Program-made: the position numbers and the translations under genes | The notes under the pieces: generated by a model | What the model was told of the DNA's origin: nothing | Seen by the model: the letters and a program-made list of their open reading frames with translations, nothing else | Databases searched by the model: none | Part shown: positions 11,072-33,334 of the stretch, piece by piece | Layout of the letters: each line of letters begins with the position of its first letter | Numbering within the stretch: the first letter of the stretch is position 1 | Assembly (NCBI GenBank): GCA_977020255.1 | Contig: CDROCS010002735.1 | Location: forward strand, 1 to 64,000 | Reading direction: 5' to 3' | DNA: 64,000 nt | Origin: Obrimoposthia wandeli | Taxonomy: Eukaryota

Positions 11072-11093
11072 GAAAGGCTTTGCTTTAGCCTTT
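11072..11093 (+). terminator. Probable intrinsic terminator
   Basis: AAAGGCT-TTGCTTT-AGCCTTT followed by a T-run, downstream of the redoxin gene. Confidence 0.55.
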
Positions 11094-11168
11094 TTGATTG
11101 AGAAATTTATTGCGATAATGATGCGCGCTAATGAGATGGGGATATTTTTTGCGGGAAATGATCTTAGA

Positions 11169-12062: not shown

Positions 12063-12214
12063 CCAATAGTTATATCTACTATATCTATAATCATCTATCA
12101 CGGCTTCTAACTTCGTTCCATAATCCTAGTGCACTAAAAATAAGTGACACGTCACTGTTAGTGGTGACGGTTAATAAAGAGTGTAATGAGCCGAATAATA
12201 AAGAGGTAGTGATA

Positions 12215-12982: not shown

Positions 12983-13069
12983 TGGTAGGAGCATTACTTA
13001 ACTAAGTTGTTAAAACGCTCGAATAGCGTAGCCGAATAAATAGCTACGCTAATCAAAGTTAACGATTTA

Positions 13070-14927: not shown

Positions 14928-16073
14928 ATGTCAGCATCTCTAATTAGTCGGGCGGCCTGTATTGAAGATTTGAAAAATCTAACTCAAAAACGCATCCCAC
15001 AGTTTGCCTTTGACTATCTCGCGGGTGGATGCAATGCGGAAAATACTTTGCGCAAAAACCGCGCGGCGCTGGATCAAGTAGAGCTGCAACCTCGTTATCT
15101 TGCTACATCGGCAGGAGCGAGTTTAGACACAGTGATTTTAGGTCACAAATACGCTGCACCTTTTGGTGTAGCACCCTTGGGGTTGAGTGGGCTTATTTGG
15201 CCCAAGGCTTCTGAGTATCAGGCCAGTGCTGCGCGCGATGCAAATATACCTTATATTCTAAGTACATTGGCGAGCACCTCAATTGAACGTGCAGCGCAGT
15301 GCGCTGGTGACAATTTTTGGTTCCAGCTCTATCCACCATCAGACTTAGCTATCCGGGCAGATCTGATGCGTCGAGCAGAGGCTGTTGGCTGCCGACATTT
15401 GGTGGTGACCATCGATGTCCCAGCGGCGGGCCGTAGACCAAAAGATATTCGAAACGGGCTCTCTGTCCCGCCAAAAATTAGCGCCACCAGTATCCTACAG
15501 ACTATGGCCCGACCTTCGTGGGCTATGGCAACGGCTTTGCAGGGGATTCCTCAATTTGCATCTATGATGCCCTATATGAAGAACATCACCAATCTAAAGG
15601 ATGTGGCCAATTATATTCGCACTACTTTGAAAGATGTAGTAGATTTTCCCATGCTGCAGCAGCTGCGCCAGCAATGGTCAGGAAAACTAATTGTAAAAGG
15701 TATTTTGAGCGTGGCGGATGCCGAGTTGGCTTTGGCTGCGGGGGCGGACGCAATTATTGTTTCTAATCATGGTGGCAGACAATTAGATGCCGCGCGCTCC
15801 TCGGTTAGTGCACTGCAAGAAATCAGCGAGGTACTGGGAGATCGCATAGTGGTAATGGCCGATAGCGGAGTGGAATCAGGGCCCGACATAGCGCGATTTT
15901 TGGCGCAGGGGGCACAGATGGTTTTTGCAGGACGTGCCTTTATGTATGGGGTAGGCGCGATGGGTGAGGGTGGTGCGGCCCATAGTATCGAAATATTGCG
16001 TTTAGAGCTGCTACAAGTTATGGAGCAGTTGCGCTGTGAAACTCCGCAGCAATTACCCAAATTTCTATTGTAA
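14928..16073 (+). CDS. slcD: FMN-dependent alpha-hydroxy-acid dehydrogenase; probable sulfolactate dehydrogenase (SlcD-like)
   Basis: WFQLY, TIDVP, KLIVKGI, SNHGGRQLD, DSG..G.DI, GR motifs. The specific function is inferred from the hps context and the shared operator. Confidence 0.65.
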   Translation: MSASLISRAACIEDLKNLTQKRIPQFAFDYLAGGCNAENTLRKNRAALDQVELQPRYLATSAGASLDTVILGHKYAAPFGVAPLGLSGLIWPKASEYQASAARDANIPYILSTLASTSIERAAQCAGDNFWFQLYPPSDLAIRADLMRRAEAVGCRHLVVTIDVPAAGRRPKDIRNGLSVPPKISATSILQTMARPSWAMATALQGIPQFASMMPYMKNITNLKDVANYIRTTLKDVVDFPMLQQLRQQWSGKLIVKGILSVADAELALAAGADAIIVSNHGGRQLDAARSSVSALQEISEVLGDRIVVMADSGVESGPDIARFLAQGAQMVFAGRAFMYGVGAMGEGGAAHSIEILRLELLQVMEQLRCETPQQLPKFLL

Positions 16074-16175: not shown

Positions 16176-17222
16176 TTAATGCTCATTAGGGCTAAGAGAG
16201 ATCCTAGCGGGTGCTATGCCCGTGGTCTCGCGTATCCTAATATCAGCGGGTAGTTGCATATGTGAAATAGCGCGGCTGTTGTTTTCAATACAGTTTAAAA
16301 GGTAAGTTGCAGCAAGTGCTCCCATGCGCCTCGCGGGCACATTAATGGTTGTTAGGCTAGGGGATAGTACAGCGGTAATTTCTAAGTTATCAAAGCCAGT
16401 AATCGACAGTGCTTGCGGTACAGTTATACCTAGTTGACGCGCAGCTGAGAGGGCGCCCAATGCGAGAATATCGTTGCCACAGACCACGGCGCTAAATGGC
16501 TGTCCCGCAGCGACTAGGTCAGAGAGAGCATTGCTTGCCTCTGTTGAGCTGTAACGGCACTCGCGAATTAACTCTGATTTGAGATGAATACCTTTTTCCT
16601 GCAGAGACTCCTGTACCCCTCGCAAACGCTCCCTCGCTCTATCGTTATCCGCCTGTATCCCCGTTATCATGGCTATTTGGGTATGTCCCATGGCTATTAA
16701 GTGCTCACCAATTTTTCGCCCCGCAGCATAGTTGTCAAAACCAATGCAGCTGTGCATGGACTGGCTGTTGTAGGTCCACAAATTGACAAAGGGAATCCGA
16801 TGGAGGTTGAGCATTTGATAAACTTCGGGCCGATGATCTTCACCTATCAGCACCATGCCGTCGATCCCGCGCGTTATCAAACTCTTGACTTCGTGCAACT
16901 CCTCATCGAGGGAATAATTACTACTGGCAATCAGTAAAGTGTAGTTGGCCTCTGAAAGCCCACGCTGTAGGTAGTGAATGCCATTGGCAAAAATGCCGTT
17001 ATCTATGGTAGGCACAATAGCACCTATAGTATGTGTTCGGCTGGAGGCAAGGGCTCGAGCTGCACCGTGCGGGGCATAACCGAGATCTTCTATCGCTGCG
17101 TTAATGCGTTCGCGCAATTTTAGTTTGACTTGTTCCGGATGATTGATACATCGCGAAACTGTAGCGGTAGATACTCCCGCGGCAGTCGCAACGTCTTGCA
17201 ATCTCGGTTTTGGCTGGTGCAT
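16176..17222 (-). CDS. hpsR: LacI-family repressor of the DHPS cluster
   Basis: LQDVATAAGVSTATVSR HTH, sugar-binding fold, divergent from the TRAP operon. Confidence 0.85.
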   Translation of the reverse strand: MHQPKPRLQDVATAAGVSTATVSRCINHPEQVKLKLRERINAAIEDLGYAPHGAARALASSRTHTIGAIVPTIDNGIFANGIHYLQRGLSEANYTLLIASSNYSLDEELHEVKSLITRGIDGMVLIGEDHRPEVYQMLNLHRIPFVNLWTYNSQSMHSCIGFDNYAAGRKIGEHLIAMGHTQIAMITGIQADNDRARERLRGVQESLQEKGIHLKSELIRECRYSSTEASNALSDLVAAGQPFSAVVCGNDILALGALSAARQLGITVPQALSITGFDNLEITAVLSPSLTTINVPARRMGALAATYLLNCIENNSRAISHMQLPADIRIRETTGIAPARISLSPNEH

Positions 17223-17619: not shown

Positions 17620-18765
17620 ATGAGTAAATTAAATACCCCCCTCAATCCAGAACGTCGCCGATTTATGTCACTGACCAGCAAGTTTGGTTTTACCGCTGCG
17701 ACGCTGGCGGCAGCATCCGGTGTGATGATGTCTGATCAAGCGGTGGCTGCAATATCTAAAGAAGAGAAAGAGCGTGAATCTAAGGCCAAGCATAAAATGG
17801 TGATTGCCACTGCTTATGTGTTAGGCGCATCGCGTAGTTATCCTATTATGCAGTTAGATTTCAAAGAGAACATCCAAAATCTGACCAACCGTGAGGTGTA
17901 TGTCAAACTTGCGCCTGGTGGGCAGCTGGGAGCAGGTGGAGCACTAGCGCAGAAAGTACAGCAGGGTACCATTCAAGCAGCGCAACATTCACTGTCAAAC
18001 TTTGCCGCCTTTGCCCCAGTTGTCGATATGATCAACATTCCTTATTGGTGTGGTGAAAACCAACAATTCACTAACTTAGTGAACTCAGATGCATGGCGTA
18101 ATCAGGTCAACCCGAAGGTTGAAGAAAAAGGCTTTATGCCTCTTTGGTATGTCAATATAGACCCTCGCGTCGTCGCTCTACGTCGCGGCATGGAAGGGCC
18201 AATTAAAACGCCTGATCAGATGGAAGGCATCAAATTCCGCGTACCGGGTTCTAAAATACTGCAACAGTTCTATCGTTTGTTGGGCGCGAACCCTACACCC
18301 GTCGCTTGGGGCGAGACTCCATCTGCCATCAAACAAGGCGTGGCAGATGCATTGGATCCTTCAGTTGAAGCGCTGAACGTATTTGGTTTCAAAGATGTAC
18401 TTTCCCATGTGACCTTTATTCGTTCTGTGCCAGATGCGCAAGTCTACTCTTGCAACTTGGAATGGTTCAGATCGCTACCGAGCAAAGTGCAAGATGGTAT
18501 CAAGTTCGCGGCAGAGGTAACGGCGCAGCAAAATTTAGCTAAAGTACCAGCGGCACGTGGCTATGCAATGGCTGAGTTGGCAGAAGCGGGTGTTAAATTC
18601 TATTCTCCGACAGGGGAAGAACTGCAACAATGGAAAGATACCGCAGGGCATCAGTTACCGGTTTGGGACAAGACTAAGATTGAACTGGCAGGTTCTTTGG
18701 ATGTCTTTAACACTTTACTTGAAGCGGCTAATACTCAAGGGCAACATTTCGTGCACGATATCTGA
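17620..18765 (+). CDS. hpsK: TRAP substrate-binding protein (DctP family), Tat-exported; DHPS-binding
   Basis: ERRRFM Tat motif, GIKFRVPGS, LGANPTPVAWGETPSAIKQGVADA. Confidence 0.85.
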   Translation: MSKLNTPLNPERRRFMSLTSKFGFTAATLAAASGVMMSDQAVAAISKEEKERESKAKHKMVIATAYVLGASRSYPIMQLDFKENIQNLTNREVYVKLAPGGQLGAGGALAQKVQQGTIQAAQHSLSNFAAFAPVVDMINIPYWCGENQQFTNLVNSDAWRNQVNPKVEEKGFMPLWYVNIDPRVVALRRGMEGPIKTPDQMEGIKFRVPGSKILQQFYRLLGANPTPVAWGETPSAIKQGVADALDPSVEALNVFGFKDVLSHVTFIRSVPDAQVYSCNLEWFRSLPSKVQDGIKFAAEVTAQQNLAKVPAARGYAMAELAEAGVKFYSPTGEELQQWKDTAGHQLPVWDKTKIELAGSLDVFNTLLEAANTQGQHFVHDI

Positions 18766-18848: not shown

Positions 18849-19376
18849 TTGAATATAAACAAAAAATCATTCTGGAAAAACCTAGATGACAATGCAGAAC
18901 GCTGGATGCTACTGGTGTTTTATGTGGTGATTGTACTGACCATAGGGGTCGAAGTGGTGCGCCGCTTTGCGCTGTCTTACTCCTCAATCTGGGGAGAGGA
19001 AGTTGCCCGTTATGCATTTATTTACCTCGCCTGGATAGGTGCTGCTTCAGCAATCAAAGATCGCGCTCATATCCGTATCGATGTGATTCTCAATTTCCTG
19101 TCGCGTACAGGTCAGTTACTCATTTATATATTCGGCGATCTAGTGATGTTGATCATCTCTATGCTGGCCTTTTATTACTCCATGGAAACGCTTTTGACTT
19201 CAATTAAATTTGGTTCAGTAACTCACGGCTTGGGTATCAGTCAAGCTTGGTTTCTCGCCGCTGTACCCCTGGGGTTCTCATTGATGTTATTTCGCCTACT
19301 GCAATCTTTAATGCGCGATATTAGGGCGCTAACAAACGATAAGCCAATCTACACCGGACATCGTCTGTTCGATTAA
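18849..19376 (+). CDS. hpsL: TRAP small permease (DctQ)
   Basis: VVRRF..WGEEVARYAFIYLAWIGAA..AHIRID; four TM segments; TTG start after AGAGG. Confidence 0.85.
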   Translation: MNINKKSFWKNLDDNAERWMLLVFYVVIVLTIGVEVVRRFALSYSSIWGEEVARYAFIYLAWIGAASAIKDRAHIRIDVILNFLSRTGQLLIYIFGDLVMLIISMLAFYYSMETLLTSIKFGSVTHGLGISQAWFLAAVPLGFSLMLFRLLQSLMRDIRALTNDKPIYTGHRLFD

Positions 19377-19391
19377 ACGGGAAAATTTCAC

Positions 19392-20714
19392 ATGTATAAC
19401 TATTTAAATGCTGAAGTCAGCTTGGACTGGGGATGGGAGCTCGGTGGCCCCTTGCTGATAGGGGTCATTATGTTTGGCCTTGGGGTACCTGTCTGGGCGG
19501 TGTTAGGTGTTATCGCGGTACTGATTTTAGAGTTCAGTGGCGCACTGCCGTTGTCGCTCTTAGGCGAAGCGCTGTTTGACGGAATAGATGCTTTTGCATT
19601 GATCGCCATTCCGCTATTTATTTTGACCGGTGACGTATTAGTGCGTACCGGTCTCTCACGTAAATTATTGGATATCGCCGAGGCACTGACCGGGGGTGCA
19701 AAATCTGGCTTCGGTACTGCCACAGTACTAGTCTGCGGTTTCTTTGCCTGTATATCAGGATCAGATGCGGCGGGTGCGGCGGGTGTTGGGCGCATGACAA
19801 TCGATAGATTGGTGGAGCAGGGGTATCCCAAGCCTTACGCTTGTGCGCTTGTGGCCGCTGGTGCTTGTACTGGCATTCTTATTCCGCCTTCAATCGCCTA
19901 CATCATCATTGGCTTAGTGTTGGGGATATCCGCCTCGACGTTGTTCTTGGCGGCATTAGTCCCTGGGCTGTTAGTGATGGGTGTCATTATGTTGTGCAAC
20001 GTGATGCTGAATTTAAGATACGGCTATGAAAATGCCGGAGGCGGCTTTTCGCTAAAGCGTATCGCGAATTCAATTTACGTGGGCCGCTACGCATTAATTG
20101 TACCGGTGATTATTTTAGGCGGGATTTACAGCGGTGTTTTTACGCCGACAGAAGCGGCTGCCGTGGCGGTCATTACCACTATTATTATCGGTTTGTTGCA
20201 GAACACGATTCGCCTGTCGGATTTTCCGGCAATGCTCGCCAGCTCAGCCAAAGTGAATGGTGTGATCTTACCTATCATCGCCTTTTCGCTGCCATTAGCG
20301 CAGGCGCTTGCGGCACTTGAAGTGCCGCAAGGGTTTGTTTACATGGTAACAGATATCACCGATAACCCGACCATGATCACATTATTGATGATTGGCATTC
20401 TGATATTGGCAGGTTGTGTGATGGAGACGACTCCAAATATCGTTATCTTGGCGCCTATTATGCTACCGCTGGCACAGGAAATTGGCATGGCCGATATTCA
20501 GTTTTGCATCATGATGATTACCGCGTTGGGTGTCGGTTTTATTACTCCACCATTAGGGCTCAACCTATTTGTGGTTTCCGGTCTCACCGGTACTTCAATA
20601 CTAGGTATAGCACGCAATGCGGTGCCTTTTGTACTGGCAATGCTAAGCGTAGTACTGCTATTAGCATTTATTCCAGAACTTTCACTCTGGGCACTGCCCA
20701 GTCACACCTACTGA
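19392..20714 (+). CDS. hpsM: TRAP large permease (DctM)
   Basis: LIAIPLFILTG, ISGSDAA, GILIPPS, GVFTPTEAA, ITPPLGLNLFV. Confidence 0.88.
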   Translation: MYNYLNAEVSLDWGWELGGPLLIGVIMFGLGVPVWAVLGVIAVLILEFSGALPLSLLGEALFDGIDAFALIAIPLFILTGDVLVRTGLSRKLLDIAEALTGGAKSGFGTATVLVCGFFACISGSDAAGAAGVGRMTIDRLVEQGYPKPYACALVAAGACTGILIPPSIAYIIIGLVLGISASTLFLAALVPGLLVMGVIMLCNVMLNLRYGYENAGGGFSLKRIANSIYVGRYALIVPVIILGGIYSGVFTPTEAAAVAVITTIIIGLLQNTIRLSDFPAMLASSAKVNGVILPIIAFSLPLAQALAALEVPQGFVYMVTDITDNPTMITLLMIGILILAGCVMETTPNIVILAPIMLPLAQEIGMADIQFCIMMITALGVGFITPPLGLNLFVVSGLTGTSILGIARNAVPFVLAMLSVVLLLAFIPELSLWALPSHTY

Positions 20715-22066
<1,352 letters not shown>

Positions 22067-22067
<1 letters not shown>

Positions 22068-22825
22068 TGAAACTTTTTAATTTAGGTGGAAAAGTAGCCT
22101 TGATAACCGGCGCTTCTTCGGGAATTGGCGCGCAGCAGGCGAGGGCACTAAGTGGTGCAGGTGCTAATGTGGTATTGCTGGGTAGGCGCCGCGAGCGGCT
22201 GGATGAACTAGCAATAGAGATACGTGCCAGCGGCGGCCAAGCTGCCATAGTTGACGCAGATTTAACCAATATTGAACAGTTGGACGACATCGTCAGCCGC
22301 TGTTTAGAGCCCTGGCAGCAAATTGATATTGTGTGTAATACCGCCGGTGTTAATTTGCGACAGCACGCAGATAAAGTGACGTTGCAGAGCTGGGATCAAA
22401 CCTTAGATTTGAACCTGAAAATACCGTTTTTTCTGGCGCAGAAACTAGTACCCGCAATGGCGGAAAGAGGCTGGGGCAAAATTATTAATGTGGCATCCCT
22501 GCAATCAGAGCGGGCTTTCGCCAATGGCATAGCCTACGGTGCTTCTAAAGGGGGAATAATGCAGTTGACCCGAGCGATGGCCGAAGCCTGGTCATCTCGC
22601 GGAATTTGCTGTAATGCGATAGCGCCGGGTTTTTTCCCCACAGAATTAACCCAAGCAGTATTCGATCAAGATCAGTTGGCGCAAAAATTGGCGGATCAAA
22701 CCGCCATTGGACGCAACGGCAGCTTAGCGGATTTAGACGGCGTTTGTATCTTCTTGGCGAGCCATAGCTCTGATTATATTACCGGCCAAACTATCTATAT
22801 TGACGGCGGTTTCACCGCAAAGTGA
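22067..22825 (+). CDS. hpsO: Short-chain dehydrogenase, DHPS 2-dehydrogenase
   Basis: TGASSGIG, YGASK, NAIAPGFFPT; coupled to the hpsN stop. Confidence 0.8.
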
Positions 22826-22831
22826 GAACAT

Positions 22832-23851
22832 ATGACAACTGACACGATGAACGCGCTGGTATATACCGATACTCAAGAGATTACCTATCGCAGGGAGCCG
22901 TTACCAAAACCGCGCCCGGGTGATGTACGTGTTGATATCGCCGCTACTGCAATTTGCGGATCGGATATGCACGCCTATCACGGTAAAGACGCCCGTAGAG
23001 TACCACCATTAATTCTCGGTCACGAGGTTAGCGGCACTGTTCTGGATGGTCGTTATGCCGGACAACGTATGGTGATAAACCCACTGATGACTTGCGGTGA
23101 GTGTGTCGATTGTGCCGGCGGGCGCAGCAATTTGTGCGCCAATAGAGAGCTTATCGGTATGTACCTGCCGGGGGCATTTGCCGAGCAAGTGGCGATTTCA
23201 GAGCGCAACTTACTGCCTATTCCCAGCGATATGAACCCTATCAATGCGTCACTTACTGAACCAACAGCAACCGGATTACACGCGGTTGCGTTAGTTGAAC
23301 GGGTCTTGGCGCGGCCGCTTTCAGAGGCGCGCTGTTTAGTAATAGGTGGCGGTGCGATCGGTATGCTGACCACGCTGATCTTGAAAGCTAAAGGTTGCGT
23401 GGCGATAGATCTTGCAGAAACTAACGCGTTGAGAAGACGCAGCGTTGAAGAGCAAAATTGTGCCACTTGTTTTAATCCAATGGAAGAGCCTCTGCCTCAT
23501 CCTAGTGGCTACGACGTGGTCTTTGACTGTGTGGGTGCTGGTGTGACAAGGCGTACGGCCAGCGAGGCAGTCCGCCCCGGTGGCATTATTTCCCATGTGG
23601 GTTTGCAGGACGATGGGCCGGGGCTAGATACCCGTAAACTTACCTTGCAAGAAGTCATACTATTGGGCAACTACTGTTACACCCGAGCCGATATGCAAGC
23701 GTCGATCGACATGCTGTATCGCGGTCAACTGGGTAGTTTAGATTGGGTTGAAGTGCGCCCGCTCTCAGGCGGCTCTCAGGCCTTCACTGACTTGCATAAC
23801 GGTAATGTGGCGGCGGCCAAAATAGTGCTGCAACCAGATTCGTTATTATGA
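22832..23851 (+). CDS. hpsP: Zn-dependent (MDR) alcohol dehydrogenase, DHPS 2-dehydrogenase
   Basis: ICGSD, GHE, CGECVDC..C structural Zn site, LTEP, GGGAIG. Confidence 0.8.
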   Translation: MTTDTMNALVYTDTQEITYRREPLPKPRPGDVRVDIAATAICGSDMHAYHGKDARRVPPLILGHEVSGTVLDGRYAGQRMVINPLMTCGECVDCAGGRSNLCANRELIGMYLPGAFAEQVAISERNLLPIPSDMNPINASLTEPTATGLHAVALVERVLARPLSEARCLVIGGGAIGMLTTLILKAKGCVAIDLAETNALRRRSVEEQNCATCFNPMEEPLPHPSGYDVVFDCVGAGVTRRTASEAVRPGGIISHVGLQDDGPGLDTRKLTLQEVILLGNYCYTRADMQASIDMLYRGQLGSLDWVEVRPLSGGSQAFTDLHNGNVAAAKIVLQPDSLL

Positions 23852-23964: not shown

Positions 23965-25083
23965 ATGAATAACAGTGAAAAAATCTGGCATGCGCTGGGT
24001 CAAAACAAAGTAGACAAGATAGCATTCAATCCATGCAATAAGCTTAATTTAGTGATGAAGTACGTCCCTAAAGAGATGGAAGTATGGGACATAACTAAAG
24101 AATCGGGTGGTCTGGCGCTATGTTTTGGGCGCAGTTTAGGCGCTAAACGCTCTGCGATGTTTATTCAAAACACTGGCTTAGGTAACTTGGTAACTGAACT
24201 TTACACTATGCAAAAGTTGTATCAGGAAGGGTTACCTATATTCGCATCTTTTCGAGGTTACTTCCAAGAGCCTATAGAAGCGCAAATCATCTACGGCAGC
24301 AACATGCAAAGGTTACTTGGCGCGATTGATGTCGAGTATCGTATTCTGGAAAAAAGCGAAGATCTGATTGACCTAGAAGAAGATGTCGCCAACTGTTTTG
24401 CTGAGAAGAAAGTCAAAGTTTACTTGTTGTCACCAGAACTTTGGGAAGAACGTGTGGATGACTACCATGTATTTGGTCAGCCAAAATTCACTCCAGTGAC
24501 GGTTAAAACTGAAGCTTATGATGGCAACCCTACGCAAATACGTGCTGAGGCCATCGAAGTAATTATGGATAACGTTGGTAGCGATGATATTGTTCTGTCG
24601 CAGATCGGTTTCCCTTCTAAAGAAGTTTATAACGCCAATGACCGCGCAGAGAATTTTTACATGTTGGGTGCTCTTGGCTCAGCGACAGAAGTGGGCATAG
24701 GGCTGGCAGATGCGCTAGAAGATCGCCATGTCTACATAGTGGATGGCGATGGATCTTTCTTCTTTAACCCTAACCAGTTGGTTGATTTGGCAGCATTTAA
24801 ACCGAAAAACTTAACGGTAATCTGTTTAGACAATGGTAGCTATGGCTCCACTGGCAACCAGCCGACGCTGAGTTCAAGTGGTATGAATTTAAGTTCTTGG
24901 GCGCAGACCATGGGTATAGAGCGCACGGGCATCACAGACGAGCCTGAAGTATTTGCCGAGTTGCTCAAAGAGAAGCCTTCTTTCATTCACTATCTGATTA
25001 AAGCGGGTAATAAAAAAACGGGTGATGAAATACCTTTGAAAGCAGTGGAAATTAAGCAACGCTTTATGGACGCTGTACTCTAA
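23965..25083 (+). CDS. comDE: Fused sulfopyruvate decarboxylase (ComD-ComE), TPP-dependent
   Basis: N-half is ComD-like (NPC..KES..QNTGLGN..SFRG..EPIEAQ..LSPELWE). C-half is ComE-like (IGFPSKEVY..DRAENFYMLG..GDGS..LDNGSYGSTGNQPT). Confidence 0.8.
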   Translation: MNNSEKIWHALGQNKVDKIAFNPCNKLNLVMKYVPKEMEVWDITKESGGLALCFGRSLGAKRSAMFIQNTGLGNLVTELYTMQKLYQEGLPIFASFRGYFQEPIEAQIIYGSNMQRLLGAIDVEYRILEKSEDLIDLEEDVANCFAEKKVKVYLLSPELWEERVDDYHVFGQPKFTPVTVKTEAYDGNPTQIRAEAIEVIMDNVGSDDIVLSQIGFPSKEVYNANDRAENFYMLGALGSATEVGIGLADALEDRHVYIVDGDGSFFFNPNQLVDLAAFKPKNLTVICLDNGSYGSTGNQPTLSSSGMNLSSWAQTMGIERTGITDEPEVFAELLKEKPSFIHYLIKAGNKKTGDEIPLKAVEIKQRFMDAVL

Positions 25084-25141
25084 AAATCTTGAATAAGCCA
25101 ATTGTTTTATCTAAAGCTCTTTAAAACGATTAAACATACGC

Positions 25142-25179
25142 TTGGCAGCTTTGAATGACTGGTTATTCAAAGCTGCCAA
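25142..25179 (+). terminator. Strong hairpin ending the hps-comDE operon
   Basis: TTGGCAGCTTTGAAT-(8 nt)-ATTCAAAGCTGCCAA, 15-bp perfect stem. Confidence 0.7.
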
Positions 25180-25443
25180 ACGGGTTGACAACTCGAGATG
25201 AAAAAAAATCTACTTCAATTTAGGCCCAGATTGATAGTTCCTAACATTTCCTAAGTACCTACATCTATGTAGGCAAGTAGCAAGGAACTTTTGAAGACGA
25301 GCTTCGCCGAGCATAGAGGGTATTATTTCCTTTGATATCGGCTTTTACTGATCAGCTAGCCTAATCGATAATTAATACTGATAAAAACCTTACTCTTACA
25401 ATTCAGCATTTTAAAATCAAATTCTCTCTCAGAGACCCCGTTA

Positions 25444-26094
25444 ATGACCATTAAACAGAAAATAATATCGTCTATTTCTCTTTCAATATTCTTAATAATT
25501 ACCTTACTTGCTTTTATTAGTAATCATAATATAAGCCAGTCATCGATGGACTCTACTATTAAATTTATGGACGAAGAAGTGAGTGCTACCGGAAAAACAC
25601 TAGAACAGAAAATGGAAGTGCTTTTTATAGGACTAGAGCTAGCCGCTTCTCTTTATAGTCCAGATCGAGCGGTGGCCGCGAGCCCTGATAAAGAAGCATT
25701 GGCACGTGAGATGGCACCCATAACGGCTTTGACCAAATCCTTAAGTATCATCAATGCATATGCGGGCCATAAAGGTGGCGTAACATATTCTTCGTCGACC
25801 GCAGGTGAAGTGCCTAATTTTAATGCCAAAGAAAAAAAACGTGAATGGTACTTACGTATCTTTGCAGGTGACAAGCGCTTAATTACCAAACCATACAAAT
25901 CTGCTGAGGGAGGATTAGTGATGGCGATAGCGGTGCCTTTGCTTAAAAATGGTGCCGTTGTCTCAACCATGAACGCTAATTTAGCACTCACTGAAATATC
26001 GTCATTTATAGAACAGCTTAACCCAGCTGCAAAAATTGACTTAACCAGAGATGATGGTTTCATCATAGCGGGTGCGAATGAGTGGATTGGCTAA
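25444..26094 (+). pseudogene. Truncated methyl-accepting chemotaxis protein (TM plus dCache only)
   Basis: N-terminal TM, REWY..ITKPY..MAIAVP..NANLAL Cache motifs. Stops before TM2, HAMP and the signalling domain. Confidence 0.7.
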
Positions 26095-28476: not shown

Positions 28477-29190
28477 TTAGTTATCTTTCACAATTGATCT
28501 ACTCAATCTTTCAATCTGTTTTTTTTCATTAATGATTTTAATTTGTTTACTAATTTTTTTAAGTAAGTTTTTATGCTTAATATGTATAAAGTGATACAAC
28601 TTTTGACTAATTAATGGGGGTTGTTGCATGTAAATGCCTGCTATTTCTTTTTCTGTAATATGAGCTTTAATTATATCGCAATTGCCGACAACTAGGTCAA
28701 CACGGTTTTTTTTAAGCATATATATGAGTTGTTCAATTTTGTTAACTGATACGCTGGCTTTCGCTTTGTTTGCAAGTTTTGTGGATTGTTTACCACCAGC
28801 TTGAAACCCAACTATTAATTGGCTTAAATCACTAATTGAAGCGATTTTAAATGTATCACTATTTGTGAAAGCACAAATATTAATCATATTCACAGGTACA
28901 TCTACTTTTATCAAGTTAGGGTACTCTTTCGCATCTATATTTGATCTTCGAAGTTCGCCGTCGTAAGTACCTTTATTGCTTTCCGTTAAAGCTCTGAGAC
29001 CCGGTAGTTTGATAATGTTTACTTTAAACCCTAGATTCTTGTATGCTTCTATAATTATAGATTCAGTCCATAAGTCACGCTGAGAGGAGCCTCTATCAAG
29101 GGTAGAAAAAGTTATTTCCTTAGGTGCGGCTGCATGTGATAAGTTCGAGCAGGCCAACATTATAGATAAAAGGAGGAGCGATGATTTCAT
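28477..29190 (-). CDS. Orphan periplasmic solute-binding protein (family 3-like)
   Basis: Signal peptide, LPGLRAL..GTYDGE, MLKKNRVDLVV, LYHFIHIKH. Confidence 0.75.
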   Translation of the reverse strand: MKSSLLLLSIMLACSNLSHAAAPKEITFSTLDRGSSQRDLWTESIIIEAYKNLGFKVNIIKLPGLRALTESNKGTYDGELRRSNIDAKEYPNLIKVDVPVNMINICAFTNSDTFKIASISDLSQLIVGFQAGGKQSTKLANKAKASVSVNKIEQLIYMLKKNRVDLVVGNCDIIKAHITEKEIAGIYMQQPPLISQKLYHFIHIKHKNLLKKISKQIKIINEKKQIERLSRSIVKDN

Positions 29191-29298
29191 AGAGCCCTCT
29201 AAAGTTGAATATAACCTTAATAACATTCTACCTTAGAAAGTCCAACAACTAATAGCGGTTAATTCCTATTGTTCACAATAACCTTCCGACATATCGGT

Positions 29299-30354
29299 CT
29301 AAAGGGGATAGCGGTAAACGGTAAATTTCCCTCGTACCTTGCTTATTCCATCATTCATCTTGGCTAGCAGTTTTAGCTGTGGGCATGGAATATAAAGATA
29401 GTTATCGTGAACATCCATTGCATCGGGCCAAAGTAATCGATCGTCTTGCACAAGATTACCGACTATTTTACCCTGTTTGATAATCGTAATTGCTTTATCT
29501 TGCACGTTTCCTAGAAATAAGCGGTTATTATTATCTTTTGTTATGCCACCGATAGTAAGTGATTTACTATATACTTCAACGTGTTGAGCTAGTTGATCAG
29601 CGGTGAGGGTTTCCTTTAGTAAATAATCTGTGTTAATACGATACATTACAGGCCCTCCAGTAGGCTGATAGTATAAGTACCTACCTTGATTATCTAACTC
29701 TATGTCATTTAAATGTAAAAAATCTGTACGAAACGGTTTTCCTTCAAAATAAGTGACAACATCAGGGTGTGCCCGAGCTGAAAAGTGCTTGTCGAGTAAT
29801 CTTCTCGCTTTGCCCGTCTTTAAATCAACCACAATCAGGGCGCCGATACCAAACTCAGAGATATAAGCAACTTTCTTGTTCAGATCAATACGTACGTCGT
29901 TAAGTTTTGCGCCAGCGGGTAATATGTTTTCAGTAAAACGATAAACACGTTCCACTTCGTTTGTTGAAGTATTAATTTTAACCAGTTTCTGGCTATCTTT
30001 TATTGGCTTGGTCCAAAAAGGAGCGGCATAGTCAACGACCCATAAATTATTATTGGTGTCTGTATGTACTGCATTGACATTAGAAAACCGATTATATGCG
30101 TCATTTAGGCTGTGTTTATTCCATTGATTACCAGGGTAAGCAATGACATTTCCATTGCTCATAACCTCACCTACAGAAGGTGAGGGATGGTCTGTCCACT
30201 GTGGCATGGAAACAAATATGCGTTTATCTGTGGTGATGGCGACACCGTTCATAGCAAATTGTGATTGAGCAACCGTTTCTAGTTTTTCTGAGTTGGCTTG
30301 CGCTAAGCTACAAAACAAACAAGTAGCAAGAAGTGTGTACAAAATTTTAGACAT
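29299..30354 (-). CDS. Major royal jelly protein / yellow family (L-dopachrome tautomerase-related) secreted beta-propeller
   Basis: Signal peptide, NGVAIT..RIFVSMP, LWVVD, LNDVRID..AYISE, LLWPDA. Confidence 0.85.
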   Translation of the reverse strand: MSKILYTLLATCLFCSLAQANSEKLETVAQSQFAMNGVAITTDKRIFVSMPQWTDHPSPSVGEVMSNGNVIAYPGNQWNKHSLNDAYNRFSNVNAVHTDTNNNLWVVDYAAPFWTKPIKDSQKLVKINTSTNEVERVYRFTENILPAGAKLNDVRIDLNKKVAYISEFGIGALIVVDLKTGKARRLLDKHFSARAHPDVVTYFEGKPFRTDFLHLNDIELDNQGRYLYYQPTGGPVMYRINTDYLLKETLTADQLAQHVEVYSKSLTIGGITKDNNNRLFLGNVQDKAITIIKQGKIVGNLVQDDRLLWPDAMDVHDNYLYIPCPQLKLLAKMNDGISKVRGKFTVYRYPL

Positions 30355-30385
30355 TACTTTGTTCCTTTAATTTATATTCTCTATT

Positions 30386-30417
30386 ACCTACCTACCTACC
30401 TACCTACCTGCCTGCCT
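30386..30417. repeat. Tetranucleotide microsatellite (ACCT)6(GCCT)2
   Basis: Read directly, about 30 bp upstream of the MRJP start codon. Confidence 0.9.
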
Positions 30418-30505
30418 TAGTTAGATTGGGCAGGTGGTTAATACTACTTGTCATTATGTGGAAAAAATGTGCTTTATTTATAAAAAGCGAACATTTTTAC
30501 TTGCT

Positions 30506-31972
30506 CTAAATACAATAAATCAGGCTACGTTTTAGTGTTGAAAACTTATTTTCGCAACCCATTACGACTAAACTAGCGGGCATATCTTGAGTGCGTATGA
30601 CAATAAATTCACCTTTTAGACTCTTTGTGATATTGGCTAATGTATCGTCGACTAATTTAGCTTTACCTTTGGCGTAATAGCGCGCTGAAAAAGGAAGGTT
30701 TTTAAGATAATAGATAGTAGAGCTTTTGTATTCTAGTTGCTGTTGCCACGCTTGTATTATTGGCTTTTGGCTTGGTTTAGTCATTGGCTTTAGCGCAATG
30801 ATAGCGACGCCTAAGAGTATTAAAAGCGGCGTAAATAGCCCTAAGTAATAATATTTTAAGGCTAGCGGGCAACGCATGTGAAAACGAGCTAAAAGCAAAG
30901 CGAATGCTGGAATACCAGGTAACACATAGGTCCATAAAATATTGCCAGAAAAAGAAAACAATATTAACGGAGATAAGAGCCAGCAATAGAGAAACGAATC
31001 TATCCCTTGCGTTTTTTCAGGTTGCTTATTACTTGATTTATAGTAACGAACTATTTGTACTATAAAGAGAGGAAACCAAGGAAGCGTTGCAATTATCCAA
31101 TACAACCAAATAGTACCGCGCATTCTATCATGAGCACTTCCGTAAAGGTCGCCTTCCCAGCCTGATACAACAAAACGTTTAAAATGCTCGCCCAGCAAAA
31201 AATAATTCAAGAAGCCAGGGGTTGCCTGCTCTGCTAATAAATACCAAGGCAGAGCTAATACTATGAACACTAATATACCTGAACGCCAAGGGAGGCATTG
31301 AAGTAGTTTATGCCACCTTGATTGAAAGCTTATCCAAATACAAAGGCTGATACCAACCAGTAATAGGGCTATTGGGCCCTTTGATAACATACCTAGTGCT
31401 AAAGCAACAAAAAACAGATGTCCCCAGAAAATATTTTTTTTCTGCCAATATAGCCAAAAGCTCGTCATTGCCAGTGAGACAGAAAACATTAATGCGGTAT
31501 CTGTCATCACAGCAGCACCGATAATTATAAAAATACTGGTGGTTGCTAATAGAGCGCAACTTAACCAGGCATAATTTGAGGTATTATCTTTAGTGGATAG
31601 GGATGACCTATTAAACAATTCGCCGGTTTTGGCTAAGTACCAAATAACATATAATGTGGCGAGAGCGACTAGAAAATGCGGAGCTCTCAGGGCAAACTCG
31701 TTATCACCTAGAAACTTTAAACCCGTAGCACTTAACCAAGTAAATATCGGCGGTTTACCCCAAAATGGCACCTCGTAATCAAACATTGGTGTTAACCAGT
31801 TTCCTGTTTCTAACATCATTCTCGCCATTTCACCGTATCTGGCTTCTGTGGTGTCCATTACTGGGTACAAATTAAGGGAAAACAATCTTACTATTAAAGT
31901 GATGATGATAAGTAACAGGGAAATACGTAACATATCGTTGAGTTTTAATTGCTGCCAAACAGTATTATTCAT
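30506..31972 (-). CDS. arnT: ArnT/PMT-family (GT-C) undecaprenyl-linked glycosyltransferase
   Basis: DTTEARYGEMAR.M, FWGKPP, TDTAL, LSKGP, EHFKRF; multi-TM. Confidence 0.8.
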   Translation of the reverse strand: MNNTVWQQLKLNDMLRISLLLIIITLIVRLFSLNLYPVMDTTEARYGEMARMMLETGNWLTPMFDYEVPFWGKPPIFTWLSATGLKFLGDNEFALRAPHFLVALATLYVIWYLAKTGELFNRSSLSTKDNTSNYAWLSCALLATTSIFIIIGAAVMTDTALMFSVSLAMTSFWLYWQKKNIFWGHLFFVALALGMLSKGPIALLLVGISLCIWISFQSRWHKLLQCLPWRSGILVFIVLALPWYLLAEQATPGFLNYFLLGEHFKRFVVSGWEGDLYGSAHDRMRGTIWLYWIIATLPWFPLFIVQIVRYYKSSNKQPEKTQGIDSFLYCWLLSPLILFSFSGNILWTYVLPGIPAFALLLARFHMRCPLALKYYYLGLFTPLLILLGVAIIALKPMTKPSQKPIIQAWQQQLEYKSSTIYYLKNLPFSARYYAKGKAKLVDDTLANITKSLKGEFIVIRTQDMPASLVVMGCENKFSTLKRSLIYCI

Positions 31973-33044
31973 TTGGTTTTTGGCCTATCTCTTGGGAGGG
32001 AGTTATATGAGAAGAATGTTGCTGTTCCATAATTAAATAGAGTGGACGTTGTTTGCTTTCGATAAAAATCCTTCCTATGTATTCACCCAAAATACCAATT
32101 GATAACAATTGCACTCCACCTAACATGAGTACAATCGTGATAGTAGAGCTGTACCCCGCGACAGAGTTACCATAAACGAGAGTTTTAATAACAGTACTAA
32201 TAGCTAACATTAAGGCGATGATAGAAATGGTAAAACCTGCAAAACTGGCTAGTTTCAAAGGTTTAGTGCTAAAAGAGGTTATCCCTTCAAAAGCTAAGTG
32301 TAGTAGTTTGCAATAGCTCCATTTTGTTTGCCCTGCGTGGCGTGGTTCACGATCAAACTTTAAGGTTGTTCGTTTATATCCAGGCCAGGCAAAGAGACCC
32401 TTCATATAGCGTGTTTTCTCTGGCAATAGGTTAATTTGTTTGACTACTCGTCGATCTAGCAACCTGAAATCACCAACATTTTTTGGAATACAAAGATCGG
32501 ATAATTGATTGAGTAACTTATAATATATATTAGCCGAAAAGCGTTTCAGCCAGGTTTCGCCAGTACGCGTGTTTCGTTGCATATCTACAACGTCATAGCC
32601 TTCGCGCCATTTGTCTAGCATTTTGGGAATAAGTGCTGGTGGGTCTTGCAGGTCAGCATCTAATAAAATAACGGCTTTACCTGTTGATTGCTCCAGGCCT
32701 GCGCACATAGCGGCTTCTTTACCAAAGTTACGACTCAAACGTAGGTTGTTAATATCAATTGTAGTGCTATCACCTCTTGGTTGAGCATGAATAGTACGTG
32801 TACTTATAAGAGCTTGATGTAAAACAGTCCAAGAGTTATCAGTACTGCCGTCATCTATATAAATAATCTCGCAGTGTAGGTTTAAGGTATTTAATACCTC
32901 TGTTAGTTTTTGATGACACTCAGCCAGTACTTCAGCTTCATTGTAGTAAGCAATGATAATACTCAAAGTTGGAGTATTATTCGGTGAGATATTGAGCAGC
33001 GCTGAGCTTGCTGGTTTATTAAATTGAGTATTATTTAAGTTCAT
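31965..33044 (-). CDS. GT2 polyprenol-phosphate glycosyltransferase (GtrB/ArnC-like)
   Basis: YNE, IDDGSTD, LSRNFGKEAA, DADLQDPP, GDFRLLDR, GEYIGRIF.ESKQRP. Confidence 0.9.
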   Translation of the reverse strand: MNLNNTQFNKPASSALLNISPNNTPTLSIIIAYYNEAEVLAECHQKLTEVLNTLNLHCEIIYIDDGSTDNSWTVLHQALISTRTIHAQPRGDSTTIDINNLRLSRNFGKEAAMCAGLEQSTGKAVILLDADLQDPPALIPKMLDKWREGYDVVDMQRNTRTGETWLKRFSANIYYKLLNQLSDLCIPKNVGDFRLLDRRVVKQINLLPEKTRYMKGLFAWPGYKRTTLKFDREPRHAGQTKWSYCKLLHLAFEGITSFSTKPLKLASFAGFTISIIALMLAISTVIKTLVYGNSVAGYSSTITIVLMLGGVQLLSIGILGEYIGRIFIESKQRPLYLIMEQQHSSHITPSQEIGQKPNE

Positions 33045-33334
33045 TAGTTTTACTTTACCATTTACCAATATTGGTAGTGCTTTTTTGTAACAGACCTTTA
33101 ATTAAGAAGAGCTCTGCTCATTCTGGATGAGCCGTTATTCTTAATAATCTGCTTAGTCGAATTCACATTGAATGACCTGTTCATAGTAGAAATTTGCTTT
33201 GCAAAGCATAACTATAAGAGGCCTCTAAAAGTTTATGCGGCTAGAGTAATATTGAGTACGTCGAAAAAAAGTGAAATGATCTAAGTTCAAAAAGAGGAAT
33301 ATAAAAAGTAAAGAAGCTTGGTATGAATACAGGG

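What the first reader, a model, noticed from the sequence alone, without database searches (positions are those of the whole stretch)
23965..25083. Single-chain ComDE resembling the fused methanogen coenzyme M biosynthesis enzyme, placed in a catabolic operon
Catabolic ComD and ComE in roseobacters are separate genes. A natural fusion is known from Methanosarcinales-type coenzyme M synthesis. This protein is fused, and from recall its linker and ComD-end features (EPIEAQ, LSPELWE) and IGFPSKE..NFYMLG look like that archaeal type. This suggests an anabolic archaeal-type enzyme repurposed for sulfonate catabolism, or an unrecognised bacterial clade of fused ComDE.
Basis: partly seen in the sequence, partly recalled or inferred. 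Interest (0 to 1): 0.75.

Follow-up and report, generated by a model that had tools for sequence, protein, structure and literature searches.

The report
Single-chain sulfopyruvate decarboxylase in DHPS operon
A marine gammaproteobacterium's operon for eating the algal sulfonate DHPS ends in a one-piece sulfopyruvate decarboxylase that belongs to the same fused lineage as the methanogen coenzyme M enzyme, not to the two-gene version roseobacters use in an otherwise matching operon.

Summary
ORF 23965-25083 (+, 372 aa) is an intact single-chain ComD+ComE-type thiamine-diphosphate decarboxylase. It is the last gene of a DHPS operon: LacI regulator, TRAP HpsKLM, HpsN, SDR, Zn-ADH, then this gene, with an FMN 2-hydroxyacid dehydrogenase upstream.

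A careful tree puts all fused ComDE in one clade (support 100/99). The query sits in a gammaproteobacterial subclade (Neptunomonas, Leucothrix, Ca. Poriferihabitaceae; at least 120 clusters at 90% identity). Its sister is a group of fused proteins from "delta proteobacteria"/Syntrophobacteraceae, followed by Chloroflexi, near Methanosarcinales and Methanoperedens.

Roseobacter split ComD/ComE lie in a syntenic operon but are only 29% identical. Grouping them with the query clade is rejected (AU p = 1e-5), so this is not a recent proteobacterial fusion. Positions that separate ComDE from phosphonopyruvate decarboxylase carry the ComDE state, and no PEP mutase is nearby.

An archaeal donor is possible but unproven: the non-nested alternative is not rejected (AU p = 0.14). 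Sulfopyruvate activity and the fate of sulfoacetaldehyde are inferred; no Xsc is in the window.

Verdict: a new member of a known kind, of moderate interest. Curated HMM cutoffs miss it, so gammaproteobacterial DHPS-to-sulfoacetaldehyde flux may be under-counted. An earlier first-stage note on this window (s1-229464) already called the island a DHPS island.

The parts
14928..16073 (+). FMN-dependent 2-hydroxyacid dehydrogenase, the SlcD-like candidate for sulfolactate to sulfopyruvate
   Evidence: Pfam FMN_dh scores 389 bits. An FMN dehydrogenase is conserved next to the fused gene in L001, L005 and L006. Roseobacter operons carry an alpha-hydroxy acid oxidase after comE. Identity to the roseobacter protein is only 35-38%. 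The substrate is inferred.
16176..17222 (-). LacI-family regulator, divergently transcribed
   Evidence: Pfam LacI plus Peripla_BP. It holds the same position and orientation as in roseobacter hps operons, at 43% identity.
17620..18765 (+). TRAP solute-binding protein, HpsK-type (DHPS-binding)
   Evidence: 534 bits to PDB 24gc, 'DHPS TRAP transporter'. 67-68% identical to the roseobacter operon protein.
18849..19376 (+). TRAP small permease (DctQ/HpsL)
   Evidence: Pfam DctQ. 58-59% identical to the roseobacter counterpart.
19392..20714 (+). TRAP large permease (DctM/HpsM)
   Evidence: TIGR00786 scores above its cutoff. 68% identical to the roseobacter counterpart.
20763..22067 (+). HpsN, sulfopropanediol (DHPS) 3-dehydrogenase
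   Evidence: 592 bits to solved CpHpsN 8V35 and 548 bits to (R)-DHPS dehydrogenase 8WWE, against about 250 bits to histidinol dehydrogenases.
22067..22825 (+). SDR oxidoreductase in the HpsO position (DHPS 2-dehydrogenase candidate)
   Evidence: Pfam adh_short. Syntenic with and 53-58% identical to the roseobacter operon SDR.
22832..23851 (+). Zn-dependent alcohol dehydrogenase in the HpsP position
   Evidence: Pfam ADH_N and ADH_zinc_N. Syntenic with and 44-47% identical to the roseobacter operon ADH.
23965..25083 (+). Single-chain ComDE (sulfopyruvate decarboxylase candidate), 372 aa
23965..24444 (+). PYR (ComD-like) domain, residues 1-160, with catalytic Glu46
   Evidence: TIGR03845 matches residues 4-160 at 109 bits, below the 148-bit cutoff. 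E46 is invariant. The model shows an alpha/beta domain here.
24445..24540 (+). Linker, residues 161-192 (coil; includes HVFGQP 168-173)
   Evidence: No secondary structure and pLDDT of 68-85 in the model. A linker of about 32 aa is present in all fused ComDE and is recognisably homologous with the 'delta' sister group.
24541..25080 (+). PP (ComE-like) domain, residues 193-372, with TPP motif GDGS 261-264 ... D289 N290
   Evidence: TIGR03846 matches residues 193-371 at 193 bits. Pfam TPP_enzyme_C. TM-score 0.83 (normalised by target length) to RhiF 9iz4_B.
25139..25182 (.). 18-bp-stem hairpin about 55 nt after the stop codon, the likely operon end
   Evidence: The sequence can be read. The T-run lies on the minus-strand side only, so a terminator role for the + operon is inferred.

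Best explanation
The gene encodes a single-chain, thiamine-diphosphate- and Mg-dependent 3-sulfopyruvate decarboxylase (ComDE type, EC 4.1.1.79) that closes a DHPS catabolic operon in an Oceanospirillaceae (Neptunomonas-like) bacterium.

The proposed route has six steps:
- The TRAP system HpsKLM imports DHPS.
- The SDR and Zn-ADH (HpsO/HpsP-like) interconvert its enantiomers.
- HpsN oxidises R-DHPS to sulfolactate.
- The FMN dehydrogenase oxidises sulfolactate to sulfopyruvate.
- The fused enzyme removes CO2 to give sulfoacetaldehyde.
- Enzymes encoded elsewhere (most likely Xsc) then desulfonate it.

The N-terminal PYR domain (catalytic Glu46) and the C-terminal PP domain (GDG...DN) are joined by a linker of about 32 residues that takes the place of the middle domain of larger TPP decarboxylases. 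As in other TPP enzymes, the active site should form at a PYR/PP interface in an oligomer.

The gene was inherited already fused. It belongs to the one fused-ComDE clade shared with Methanosarcinales-type archaea and several anaerobic bacterial phyla. In Gammaproteobacteria it occupies the operon slot that split comD-comE fill in roseobacters.

Shown here: gene, domains, intact cofactor motifs, operon content, phylogeny. Inferred: substrate, oligomeric state, co-transcription, the downstream step, and the direction of transfer.
For: - Intact two-domain TPP enzyme. NCBIfam and Pfam hits; invariant E46, Q68, R97-G98, G261-D262, N290, T296-G297; confident model (pLDDT 93.7, pTM 0.93) with two alpha/beta domains and a coil linker, matching TPP decarboxylases and RhiF.
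- ComDE rather than Ppd. The summed ComD and ComE HMM scores (302 bits) far exceed the Ppd score (156 bits against a 312.5 cutoff). The protein lies in the ComDE clade, apart from bona fide Ppd. It carries the ComDE state at E102, A106, W160, P217, N268, G294 and N349, where Ppd differs. No PEP mutase is in the neighbourhood.
- Sulfonate context anchored to solved proteins: HpsN at 592 bits and HpsK at 534 bits.
- Linkage conserved in other Gammaproteobacteria. hpsN-SDR-ADH-fused ComDE-FMN dehydrogenase is kept in Neptunomonas (L001), Leucothrix pacifica (L005) and L006.
- Synteny with roseobacter plasmid operons LacI|TRAP-hpsN-SDR-ADH-usp-comD-comE-oxidase, where ComDE is the accepted sulfopyruvate decarboxylase (PMC11382572).
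- Phylogeny: fused clade 100/99; query clade with the 'delta' group 100/100; with Chloroflexi 99/98. Both halves are congruent. Roseobacter grouping is rejected at p = 1e-5.
Against: - No enzyme assay exists for any member of this clade.
- The protein is below every curated equivalog cutoff. Its N-half is divergent, with a long stem branch and clade-specific changes next to the catalytic Glu (E47S, G51A, A54F).
- RhiEF shows that a ComDE-like enzyme can be a phosphonopyruvate decarboxylase (PMC12141560), so family resemblance alone does not fix the substrate.
- No Xsc or other sulfoacetaldehyde-consuming gene was found in the window or in the L001, L005 or L006 flanks.
- No RNA data are available.
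- A 113-bp gap and a GC content 4-7 points below the neighbouring genes separate it from the upstream genes.
- The discriminating residues were derived from my own alignment, not from published mutagenesis.
Confidence: 0.8

Rival explanations
1. A fused ComDE lineage passed from Methanosarcinales-like archaea, where it makes coenzyme M, into bacteria. In Gammaproteobacteria it was then recruited for catabolism, displacing split comD/comE in a pre-existing hps operon.
For: - In the full-length careful tree the bacterial Chloroflexi + 'delta' + gamma group sits inside a 98/96 group otherwise made of Methanosarcinales, ANME, Methanoperedens, Methanocella and Methanolliviera. The C-half tree agrees.
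- Relatives have anabolic contexts: comA directly upstream in Chloroflexi L038, and a PLP cysteate-synthase-like gene directly upstream in Methanoperedens L010.
- The operon core is 44-68% identical to the roseobacter one, but ComDE is only 29% identical.
- ComDE has lower GC than its neighbours in four lineages.
Against: - The alternative tree, with the bacterial group sister to all other fused forms, is not rejected (AU p = 0.136).
- The N-half tree does not resolve the position.
- The immediate sisters are bacterial.
- Sampling was limited to the 80 best loci of one pattern scan.
- Direction of transfer and 'displacement' are inferences.
Confidence: 0.4
2. It arose by a recent fusion of proteobacterial (roseobacter-type) split comD and comE within the catabolic operon.
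For: The operon is syntenic with roseobacter operons in which comD and comE overlap by 4 nt, a layout that could fuse easily.
Against: - Only 29% identity to roseobacter ComD+ComE, against 34-43% to fused forms.
- The roseobacter pair lies in the basal split group.
- The constrained tree is 123.5 log-likelihood units worse, AU p = 1e-5.
- Both halves separately place the query in the fused clade.
- The 32-aa linker is shared with other fused forms.
Confidence: 0.01
3. It is a phosphonopyruvate decarboxylase (AepY/Ppd or RhiEF-like) rather than a sulfopyruvate decarboxylase.
For: - TIGR03297 aligns end to end at 156 bits.
- Ppd enzymes are likewise single-chain with a linker of about 30 aa.
- RhiEF shows that ComDE-like proteins can use phosphonopyruvate.
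Against: - The score is half the curated Ppd cutoff.
- The protein is separated from Ppd by a 100/99 branch.
- It has ComDE-state residues where Ppd differs.
- No PEP mutase or AEP transaminase is nearby, unlike real aepX-aepY loci.
- It is embedded in a DHPS operon in at least four genomes.
Confidence: 0.03
4. It decarboxylates, or carboligates, a different 2-oxoacid. The divergent N-half reflects a changed specificity, and sulfolactate is degraded by another route (SuyAB or CuyA) encoded elsewhere.
For: - Scores are below all cutoffs, and there are clade-specific substitutions around the catalytic Glu.
- The stem branch of the gamma + 'delta' clade is long.
- No Xsc is nearby.
- The 'delta' sister loci show no sulfonate context.
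- Some clade members (L003, L007) are not next to hps genes.
Against: - Linkage to hpsN and an FMN 2-hydroxyacid dehydrogenase, which together generate sulfopyruvate, is conserved in several gammaproteobacterial orders.
- The gene occupies exactly the slot of comDE in roseobacter operons.
- ComDE-specific residues are retained.
- L003 has an aspartate-type aminotransferase nearby, compatible with cysteate/sulfopyruvate chemistry.
Confidence: 0.08

Closest known systems
Fused ComDE of Methanosarcinales (M. acetivorans MA3298; coenzyme M biosynthesis)
   Same: Single polypeptide with PYR and PP domains and a linker of about 32 aa. Same monophyletic fused clade (100/99). Same predicted reaction, sulfopyruvate to sulfoacetaldehyde.
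   Different: Only 34-37% identical. The archaeal genes sit beside a cysteate-synthase-like PLP enzyme and are anabolic (PMC12713407). This gene ends a catabolic DHPS operon. Its ComD-like half is more divergent, falling below the TIGR03845 cutoff that the archaeal and other fused forms pass.
Roseobacter catabolic ComD + ComE (e.g. Sulfitobacter, Leisingera plasmid operons; Roseovarius/Ruegeria pathway)
   Same: Same operon slot and same pathway logic: LacI | TRAP HpsKLM - HpsN - SDR - ADH - decarboxylase, plus an FMN 2-hydroxyacid dehydrogenase.
   Different: Two overlapping genes rather than one. 29% identity. A different, basal split lineage. Grouping is rejected at p = 1e-5.
Split ComD/ComE of Methanocaldococcus jannaschii type (class I methanogens)
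   Same: Same family and cofactor motifs, with the ComDE-specific residues shared.
   Different: Two subunits. 31-33% identity. Located in the split part of the tree.
Phosphonopyruvate decarboxylase (AepY/Ppd; and split RhiEF, PDB 9IZ3/9IZ4)
   Same: Same two-domain TPP fold without a middle domain. AepY is also single-chain with a similar linker length. RhiF aligns with the C-half (93.7 bits by phmmer; TM-score normalised by target length 0.83 and 32% identity in the structural alignment).
   Different: 25-27% identity to AepY. Below the TIGR03297 cutoff. Different residues at discriminating positions. No PEP mutase partner.

Membership tests
Sulfopyruvate decarboxylase ComDE (EC 4.1.1.79) | PYR domain with catalytic Glu plus PP domain with the GDG...N(N) TPP/Mg motif, and no middle (TH3) domain | tested here: met
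   E46, GDGS 261-264 and D289-N290 are present. The model has two domains and matches TPP decarboxylases at TMq of about 0.7 without their middle domain.
Sulfopyruvate decarboxylase ComDE (EC 4.1.1.79) | Scores above the curated equivalog cutoffs of TIGR03845 (alpha) and TIGR03846 (beta) | tested here: not met
   Alpha scores 108.9 against a 147.95 cutoff; beta scores 193.2 against a 221.5 cutoff. Eight other fused forms tested also miss the beta cutoff, and seven of them pass alpha.
Sulfopyruvate decarboxylase ComDE (EC 4.1.1.79) | Phylogenetic placement with ComDE and apart from phosphonopyruvate decarboxylases | tested here: met
   The ComDE and Ppd clades are separated at 100/99, and the query lies deep inside ComDE.
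Sulfopyruvate decarboxylase ComDE (EC 4.1.1.79) | Genomic linkage to enzymes that make sulfopyruvate | tested here: met
   HpsN (592 bits to 8V35) and an FMN 2-hydroxyacid dehydrogenase are in the same island, and the linkage is conserved in L001, L005 and L006.
Sulfopyruvate decarboxylase ComDE (EC 4.1.1.79) | Catalyses 3-sulfopyruvate to sulfoacetaldehyde + CO2 | not testable with these tools
   This needs an enzyme assay. No member of the gammaproteobacterial clade was found characterised in the searched literature.
Fused (single-chain) ComDE clade, Methanosarcinales type | One polypeptide, ComD part then ComE part, joined by a linker of about 32 residues | tested here: met
   Linker length is 32 aa in the query and 28-39 aa in all fused forms examined.
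Fused (single-chain) ComDE clade, Methanosarcinales type | Shares the single fused ancestor (monophyly) in both halves | tested here: met
   The full tree gives 100/99. The N-half tree gives 90 and the C-half tree 97 SH-aLRT.
Fused (single-chain) ComDE clade, Methanosarcinales type | Coenzyme M biosynthetic context (next to cysteate synthase or comA) | tested here: not met
   The window gene follows hpsN-SDR-ADH. The anabolic neighbours are seen only in L010 and L038.
Roseobacter-type catabolic split ComDE | [quoted passage not shown] | tested here: not met
   This is a single gene. The AU test rejects a common clade (p = 1e-5). Identity is 29%.
Phosphonopyruvate decarboxylase (AepY/Ppd) | Score above the TIGR03297 cutoff and a PEP mutase partner gene | tested here: not met
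   156.1 bits against a 312.5 cutoff. No PEP mutase is among the neighbours, whereas aepX adjoins aepY in the reference loci.

The most novel reading that the evidence does not exclude
A single fused ComDE lineage crossed from methanogen-related archaea into bacteria, switched from coenzyme M (or sulfonate metabolite) biosynthesis to sulfonate catabolism, and replaced the split ComDE in an otherwise conserved proteobacterial DHPS operon. On this reading, marine Gammaproteobacteria run a DHPS-to-sulfoacetaldehyde route that current marker-gene surveys score as absent.
Probability: 0.35. Interest if true: 0.55.

Novelty: new member of a known kind. Interest (0 to 1): 0.4.

Why it matters
DHPS is a major currency between phytoplankton and marine bacteria. 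Surveys that score comD and comE as separate markers attribute the sulfopyruvate-to-sulfoacetaldehyde branch to Alphaproteobacteria. A North Sea bloom study found comD/comE only in SAR116 and Planktomarina (10.1101/2024.12.10.627767). PMC11382572 states that the Xsc pathway occurs only in Alphaproteobacteria.

The gammaproteobacterial single-chain form falls below all curated HMM cutoffs, and NCBI labels it a generic TPP enzyme or hypothetical protein. It has at least 120 clusters at 90% identity in marine metagenomes, so part of this flux may be missed.

It is also a clean case of two distant branches of one enzyme family filling the same slot of a conserved operon. It offers a soluble, single-gene, aerobic-host version of sulfopyruvate decarboxylase for biochemistry.

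Tried and rejected
- The 18-sequence C-half alignment was too diverse for the locus scan. A 6-sequence alignment worked.
- The careful tree on 103 rows did not finish in two 300-s runs. I pruned to 66 rows by dropping unnamed long-branch representatives, the very long Sphingobium pair L084, partial rows L037 and L048, and near-duplicates.
- Cluster look-ups gave few names, so taxonomy rests on the GTDB loci.
- NCBIfam on the neighbours of clade members L003 and L007 at E <= 1e-30 was mostly blank: an aspartate-type aminotransferase, an IS66 transposase and a haloacid dehalogenase.
- The 'delta' sister loci showed no sulfonate genes.
- I searched for Xsc or PEP mutase in the island's immediate flanks (9408-14013 and 28480-33068) and in the flanks of L001, L005 and L006, and found none. 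ORFs of the window beyond about 33 kb (for example 54356-56305, 649 aa) and before about 9.4 kb were not scanned against any family library. Earlier notes of the scan hold nothing on xsc.
- No RNA run holds the stretch, so read laying was not used and co-transcription is untested.
- The recent-fusion idea and the Ppd idea were tested and rejected (see rival explanations).
- I considered whether the Amphritea copy (L002) is a natural re-split. It is a pseudogene with two stop codons and a frameshift.
Full report
**1. The observation**

The + strand ORF 23965..25083 (ATG start, 372 aa) exists as described. Pfam finds only the C-terminal TPP-binding domain.

NCBIfam aligns three models:

| Model | Residues matched | Score (bits) | Cutoff (bits) |
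|---|---|---|---|
| ComD, TIGR03845 | 4-160 | 108.9 | 147.95 |
| ComE, TIGR03846 | 193-371 | 193.2 | 221.5 |
| Ppd, TIGR03297 (single-chain phosphonopyruvate decarboxylase) | end to end | 156.1 | 312.5 |

The protein is therefore a ComD+ComE-type fusion that misses every curated equivalog threshold. This explains why NCBI labels its relatives 'thiamine pyrophosphate-dependent enzyme' or 'hypothetical protein', while JGI and UniRef call them sulfopyruvate decarboxylase.

**2. The surroundings**

The genes from 14.9 to 25.1 kb are, in order:
- an FMN-dependent 2-hydroxyacid dehydrogenase (+)
- a LacI regulator (-)
- DctP, DctQ and DctM
- a HisD-like dehydrogenase
- an SDR
- a Zn-ADH
- the fused gene

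Two of these can be anchored to experimentally solved proteins. The HisD-like protein scores 592 bits to sulfopropanediol 3-dehydrogenase HpsN (8V35), against about 250 bits to real histidinol dehydrogenases. The DctP protein scores 534 bits to the DHPS-binding TRAP protein (24gc). This is a DHPS uptake and oxidation operon.

A strong hairpin at 25139-25182 follows the fused gene. No PEP mutase, Xsc, SuyAB or CuyA was found among the ORFs scanned next to the island (9.4-14 kb and 28.5-33 kb). ORFs farther out in the window were not scanned.

The island genes have 44-53% GC against 40.5% for the window. The fused gene has 43%. A truncated DHDPS-family fragment lies at the island's left edge.

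**3. Relatives**

The word-index search returned 383 hits. The best 120 are all single-chain proteins of 362-408 aa (nearly all 370-391), at least 61% identical and from marine metagenomes and Gammaproteobacteria. The top hit is 98% identical and comes from an Oceanospirillaceae MAG.

The exhaustive search over 50% cluster representatives shows how isolated the clade is:
- Its own cluster is followed by one cluster at 43% identity (P0121).
- Next come many fused proteins at about 35%.
- ComE-sized proteins follow at 39-49% over the C-half.
- Last are proteins at 25-30% identity. The two tested, P0188 and P0191, pass the Ppd cutoff.

A scan of one genome per GTDB species found seven species in the query clade: Neptunomonas, Amphritea, Ca. 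Poriferihabitaceae, Leucothrix pacifica and three unnamed Gammaproteobacteria/Pseudomonadota. C-half identity then drops sharply to 44-47% with 'delta proteobacteria', Methanoperedens, Methanosarcinales, Syntrophobacteraceae, Nitrospirota, Bathyarchaeia and Asgard archaea.

Roseobacter comD/comE pairs were recovered from annotated plasmids and are about 31% identical by tblastn, or 29% by BLASTP against the concatenated pair.

**4. Synteny with roseobacters**

The Sulfitobacter, Leisingera and Alisedimentitalea plasmids carry this layout: LacI (divergent) | small ORF - TRAP P, Q, M - hisD-type (hpsN) - SDR - ADH - universal stress protein - comD - comE - alpha-hydroxy acid oxidase.

Identity of the window proteins to their roseobacter counterparts:

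| Protein | Identity (%) |
|---|---|
| DctP | 67-68 |
| DctM | 68 |
| DctQ | 58-59 |
| HpsN | 59-66 |
| SDR | 53-58 |
| ADH | 44-47 |
| LacI | 43 |
| FMN dehydrogenase | 34-38 |
| ComDE, whole length | 29 |

The operon core is shared, but the decarboxylase is of a different lineage. Within Gammaproteobacteria the linkage is conserved. Neptunomonas L001 has the identical layout at 75-94% identity. Leucothrix L005 and L006 have LacI | hpsN-SDR-ADH-fused ComDE-FMN dehydrogenase. In all four lineages the fused gene is 4-7 GC points below its neighbours.

**5. Phylogeny**

For split enzymes I concatenated the adjacent ComD and ComE. Ppd served as outgroup: three annotated AepY/Ppd plus representatives passing TIGR03297.

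The careful IQ-TREE (66 rows, LG+C20 PMSF) gives:
- ComDE separated from Ppd at 100/99.
- Split forms basal. These include class I methanogens, Methanococcoides-type, Asgard, Freya/Jord, roseobacters with a Thermodesulfobacteriota pair, and a Clostridia pair at the base.
- A single fused clade at 100/99.
- Inside it, a 98/96 group of Methanosarcinales, ANME, Methanoperedens, Methanocella and Methanolliviera together with a bacterial group (99/98).
- The bacterial group consists of Chloroflexi plus ['delta proteobacteria'/Syntrophobacteraceae/P0121 plus the gammaproteobacterial query clade] (100/100).

The 103-row quick tree agrees. Trees of the N-half and C-half separately both put the query clade with the 'delta' group inside the fused clade. 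The gene was therefore inherited fused and is not a chimera.

Forcing the query clade together with roseobacter split ComDE costs 123.5 log-likelihood units (AU p = 1e-5).

Forcing all other fused forms into one clade, so that the bacterial group is not nested among archaea, costs only 14.4 units (AU p = 0.136). The N-half tree also leaves the position open. An archaeal donor is therefore plausible but not demonstrated.

**6. Context of the relatives**

In Methanoperedens (L010) the fused gene directly follows, with overlap, a 441-aa PLP enzyme. This is the cysteate-synthase arrangement known from Methanosarcina (MA3297-MA3298; PMC12713407). In Chloroflexi (L038) it directly follows comA, phosphosulfolactate synthase. 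Both contexts are anabolic.

The 'delta' sister loci show no sulfonate genes. The gammaproteobacterial clade is thus the branch of the fused lineage found in catabolic operons.

**7. The protein itself**

Of 71 columns that are at least 85% conserved in other ComDE, the query clade keeps 49. These include catalytic E46, Q68, G73, R97-G98, Q107, R193, E220, N230, Y232, G261-D262-G263, D289-N290 and S295-T296-G297.

Where ComDE and Ppd differ (E102, A106, L154, W160, P217, N268, G294, N349), the query has the ComDE residue. Changes shared with the 'delta' sister (E47S/N, G51A, A54F, N77T, N213Q, S236A) cluster in the N-half and explain the low ComD score.

They do not mark an archaeal type.

The linker is about 32 residues in every fused ComDE and about 30-33 in Ppd. 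Its sequence is variable, but it is recognisably homologous between the query clade and the 'delta' group.

The AlphaFold model is confident (pLDDT 93.7, pTM 0.93). It has alpha/beta domains at residues 1-160 and 193-372 and a coil linker with pLDDT 68-85. Foldseek matches benzoylformate, ketoisovalerate, indolepyruvate and pyruvate decarboxylases at TMq 0.68-0.74. These enzymes are about 150 residues longer because of their middle domain. RhiF matches on the C-half (TMt 0.83).

**8. Caveat on substrate**

RhiEF (9IZ3/9IZ4) is a split ComD/ComE homologue that decarboxylates phosphonopyruvate (PMC12141560). Architecture and family resemblance therefore cannot by themselves assign sulfopyruvate.

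The assignment here rests on four points:
- the tree
- the ComDE-state residues
- the absence of PEP mutase
- above all, the conserved embedding between HpsN/FMN dehydrogenase chemistry, in exactly the slot that comDE occupies in roseobacters

It remains an inference, which I put at about 0.8. The fate of sulfoacetaldehyde is open: no Xsc lies in the parts of the window that were scanned or in the flanks of L001, L005 or L006.

**9. Comparison with the literature**

Fused ComDE is known from Methanosarcina. Catabolic ComDE is known from roseobacters.

PMC11382572 already shows a gammaproteobacterium (Granulosicoccus antarcticus) with hpsNOP-slcD-comDE-xsc. The same paper nevertheless states that the Xsc pathway is confined to Alphaproteobacteria.

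A North Sea metatranscriptome study found comD/comE only in SAR116 and Planktomarina.

I found no paper describing the single-chain nature, distinct ancestry or sub-threshold HMM scores of the gammaproteobacterial enzymes. The library does not cover most subscription journals.

**10. Verdict**

This is a new member of a known kind: a divergent, catabolically deployed bacterial branch of the fused ComDE clade.

Interest is moderate (0.4). The reasons are the operon-slot replacement by a distant branch of the same family and the practical blind spot for marine sulfonate surveys.

An earlier first-stage note on this same window (s1-229464) described the island as a DHPS-to-sulfoacetaldehyde island. 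My tests agree, except that 'self-contained' overstates it, because the desulfonation step is not encoded there.

Noticed in passing
window 13070-13519 (-) and 13717-14016 (+): At the left edge of the higher-GC DHPS island there is a truncated DHDPS-family gene, covering only profile positions 143-287 of 289, and a 99-aa orphan ORF. They look like gene remnants at an insertion boundary. GC rises from about 0.41 to about 0.50 at 14.9 kb.
   Followed up: partly
window 23965-25083; L001 9446-10564; L005 5792-6949; L006 9446-10564: In four lineages the fused ComDE gene is 4-7 GC points lower than the hps genes beside it. This hints that it joined the operon separately.
   Followed up: partly
L002 7625-8729 (Amphritea sp. 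MAG): The Amphritea copy of the fused gene is broken. It has an in-frame stop in the linker (HVFG*P), a second stop before IGFPS, and then a frameshift. It is either a decaying pseudogene or a poor assembly.
   Followed up: yes
L013 5892-7079 (MAG labelled Anaerolineales): Its fused ComDE is 93-95% identical to those of two Methanosarcinales MAGs (L015, L070). The contig is probably mis-binned archaeal DNA, or else a very recent transfer.
   Followed up: partly
L063, L069, L072 versus L020, L022: Methanosarcinales are not uniform. Methanomethylovorans, Methanococcoides and Methanolobus carry split ComD/ComE of the class I methanogen type. Methanohalobium, other Methanosarcinaceae, ANME-2 and Methanoperedens carry the fused type.
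   Followed up: partly
L084 5941-7070 (Sphingobium sp. TomMM15 plasmid): A very divergent split ComD/ComE-like pair (branch length 2.9) is annotated 'hypothetical protein' and 'aldehyde dehydrogenase'. It sits next to a real aldehyde dehydrogenase and an alpha-hydroxy-acid oxidising enzyme. Its substrate is unknown.
   Followed up: no
window 25444-26094 (+): A 216-aa ORF downstream of the operon has an N-terminal hydrophobic segment and no Pfam or NCBIfam hit. It is followed by a 439-bp gap and may be a truncated sensor or chemoreceptor-like gene.
   Followed up: no
window 14928-16073 versus L081 9062-10186: The FMN 2-hydroxyacid dehydrogenase is only 34-38% identical to the roseobacter operon's oxidase, much less than the TRAP and HpsN proteins (58-68%). 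In the window and Neptunomonas it lies upstream of LacI, but in Leucothrix, L006 and roseobacters it lies downstream of ComDE. It may be a second non-orthologous component.
   Followed up: partly
L038 6695-8628 (Chloroflexi MAG): comA and a fused ComDE overlap and are followed by a methyltransferase and an asparagine synthase-like gene. This looks like a bacterial biosynthetic cluster for a sulfonated metabolite.
   Followed up: no
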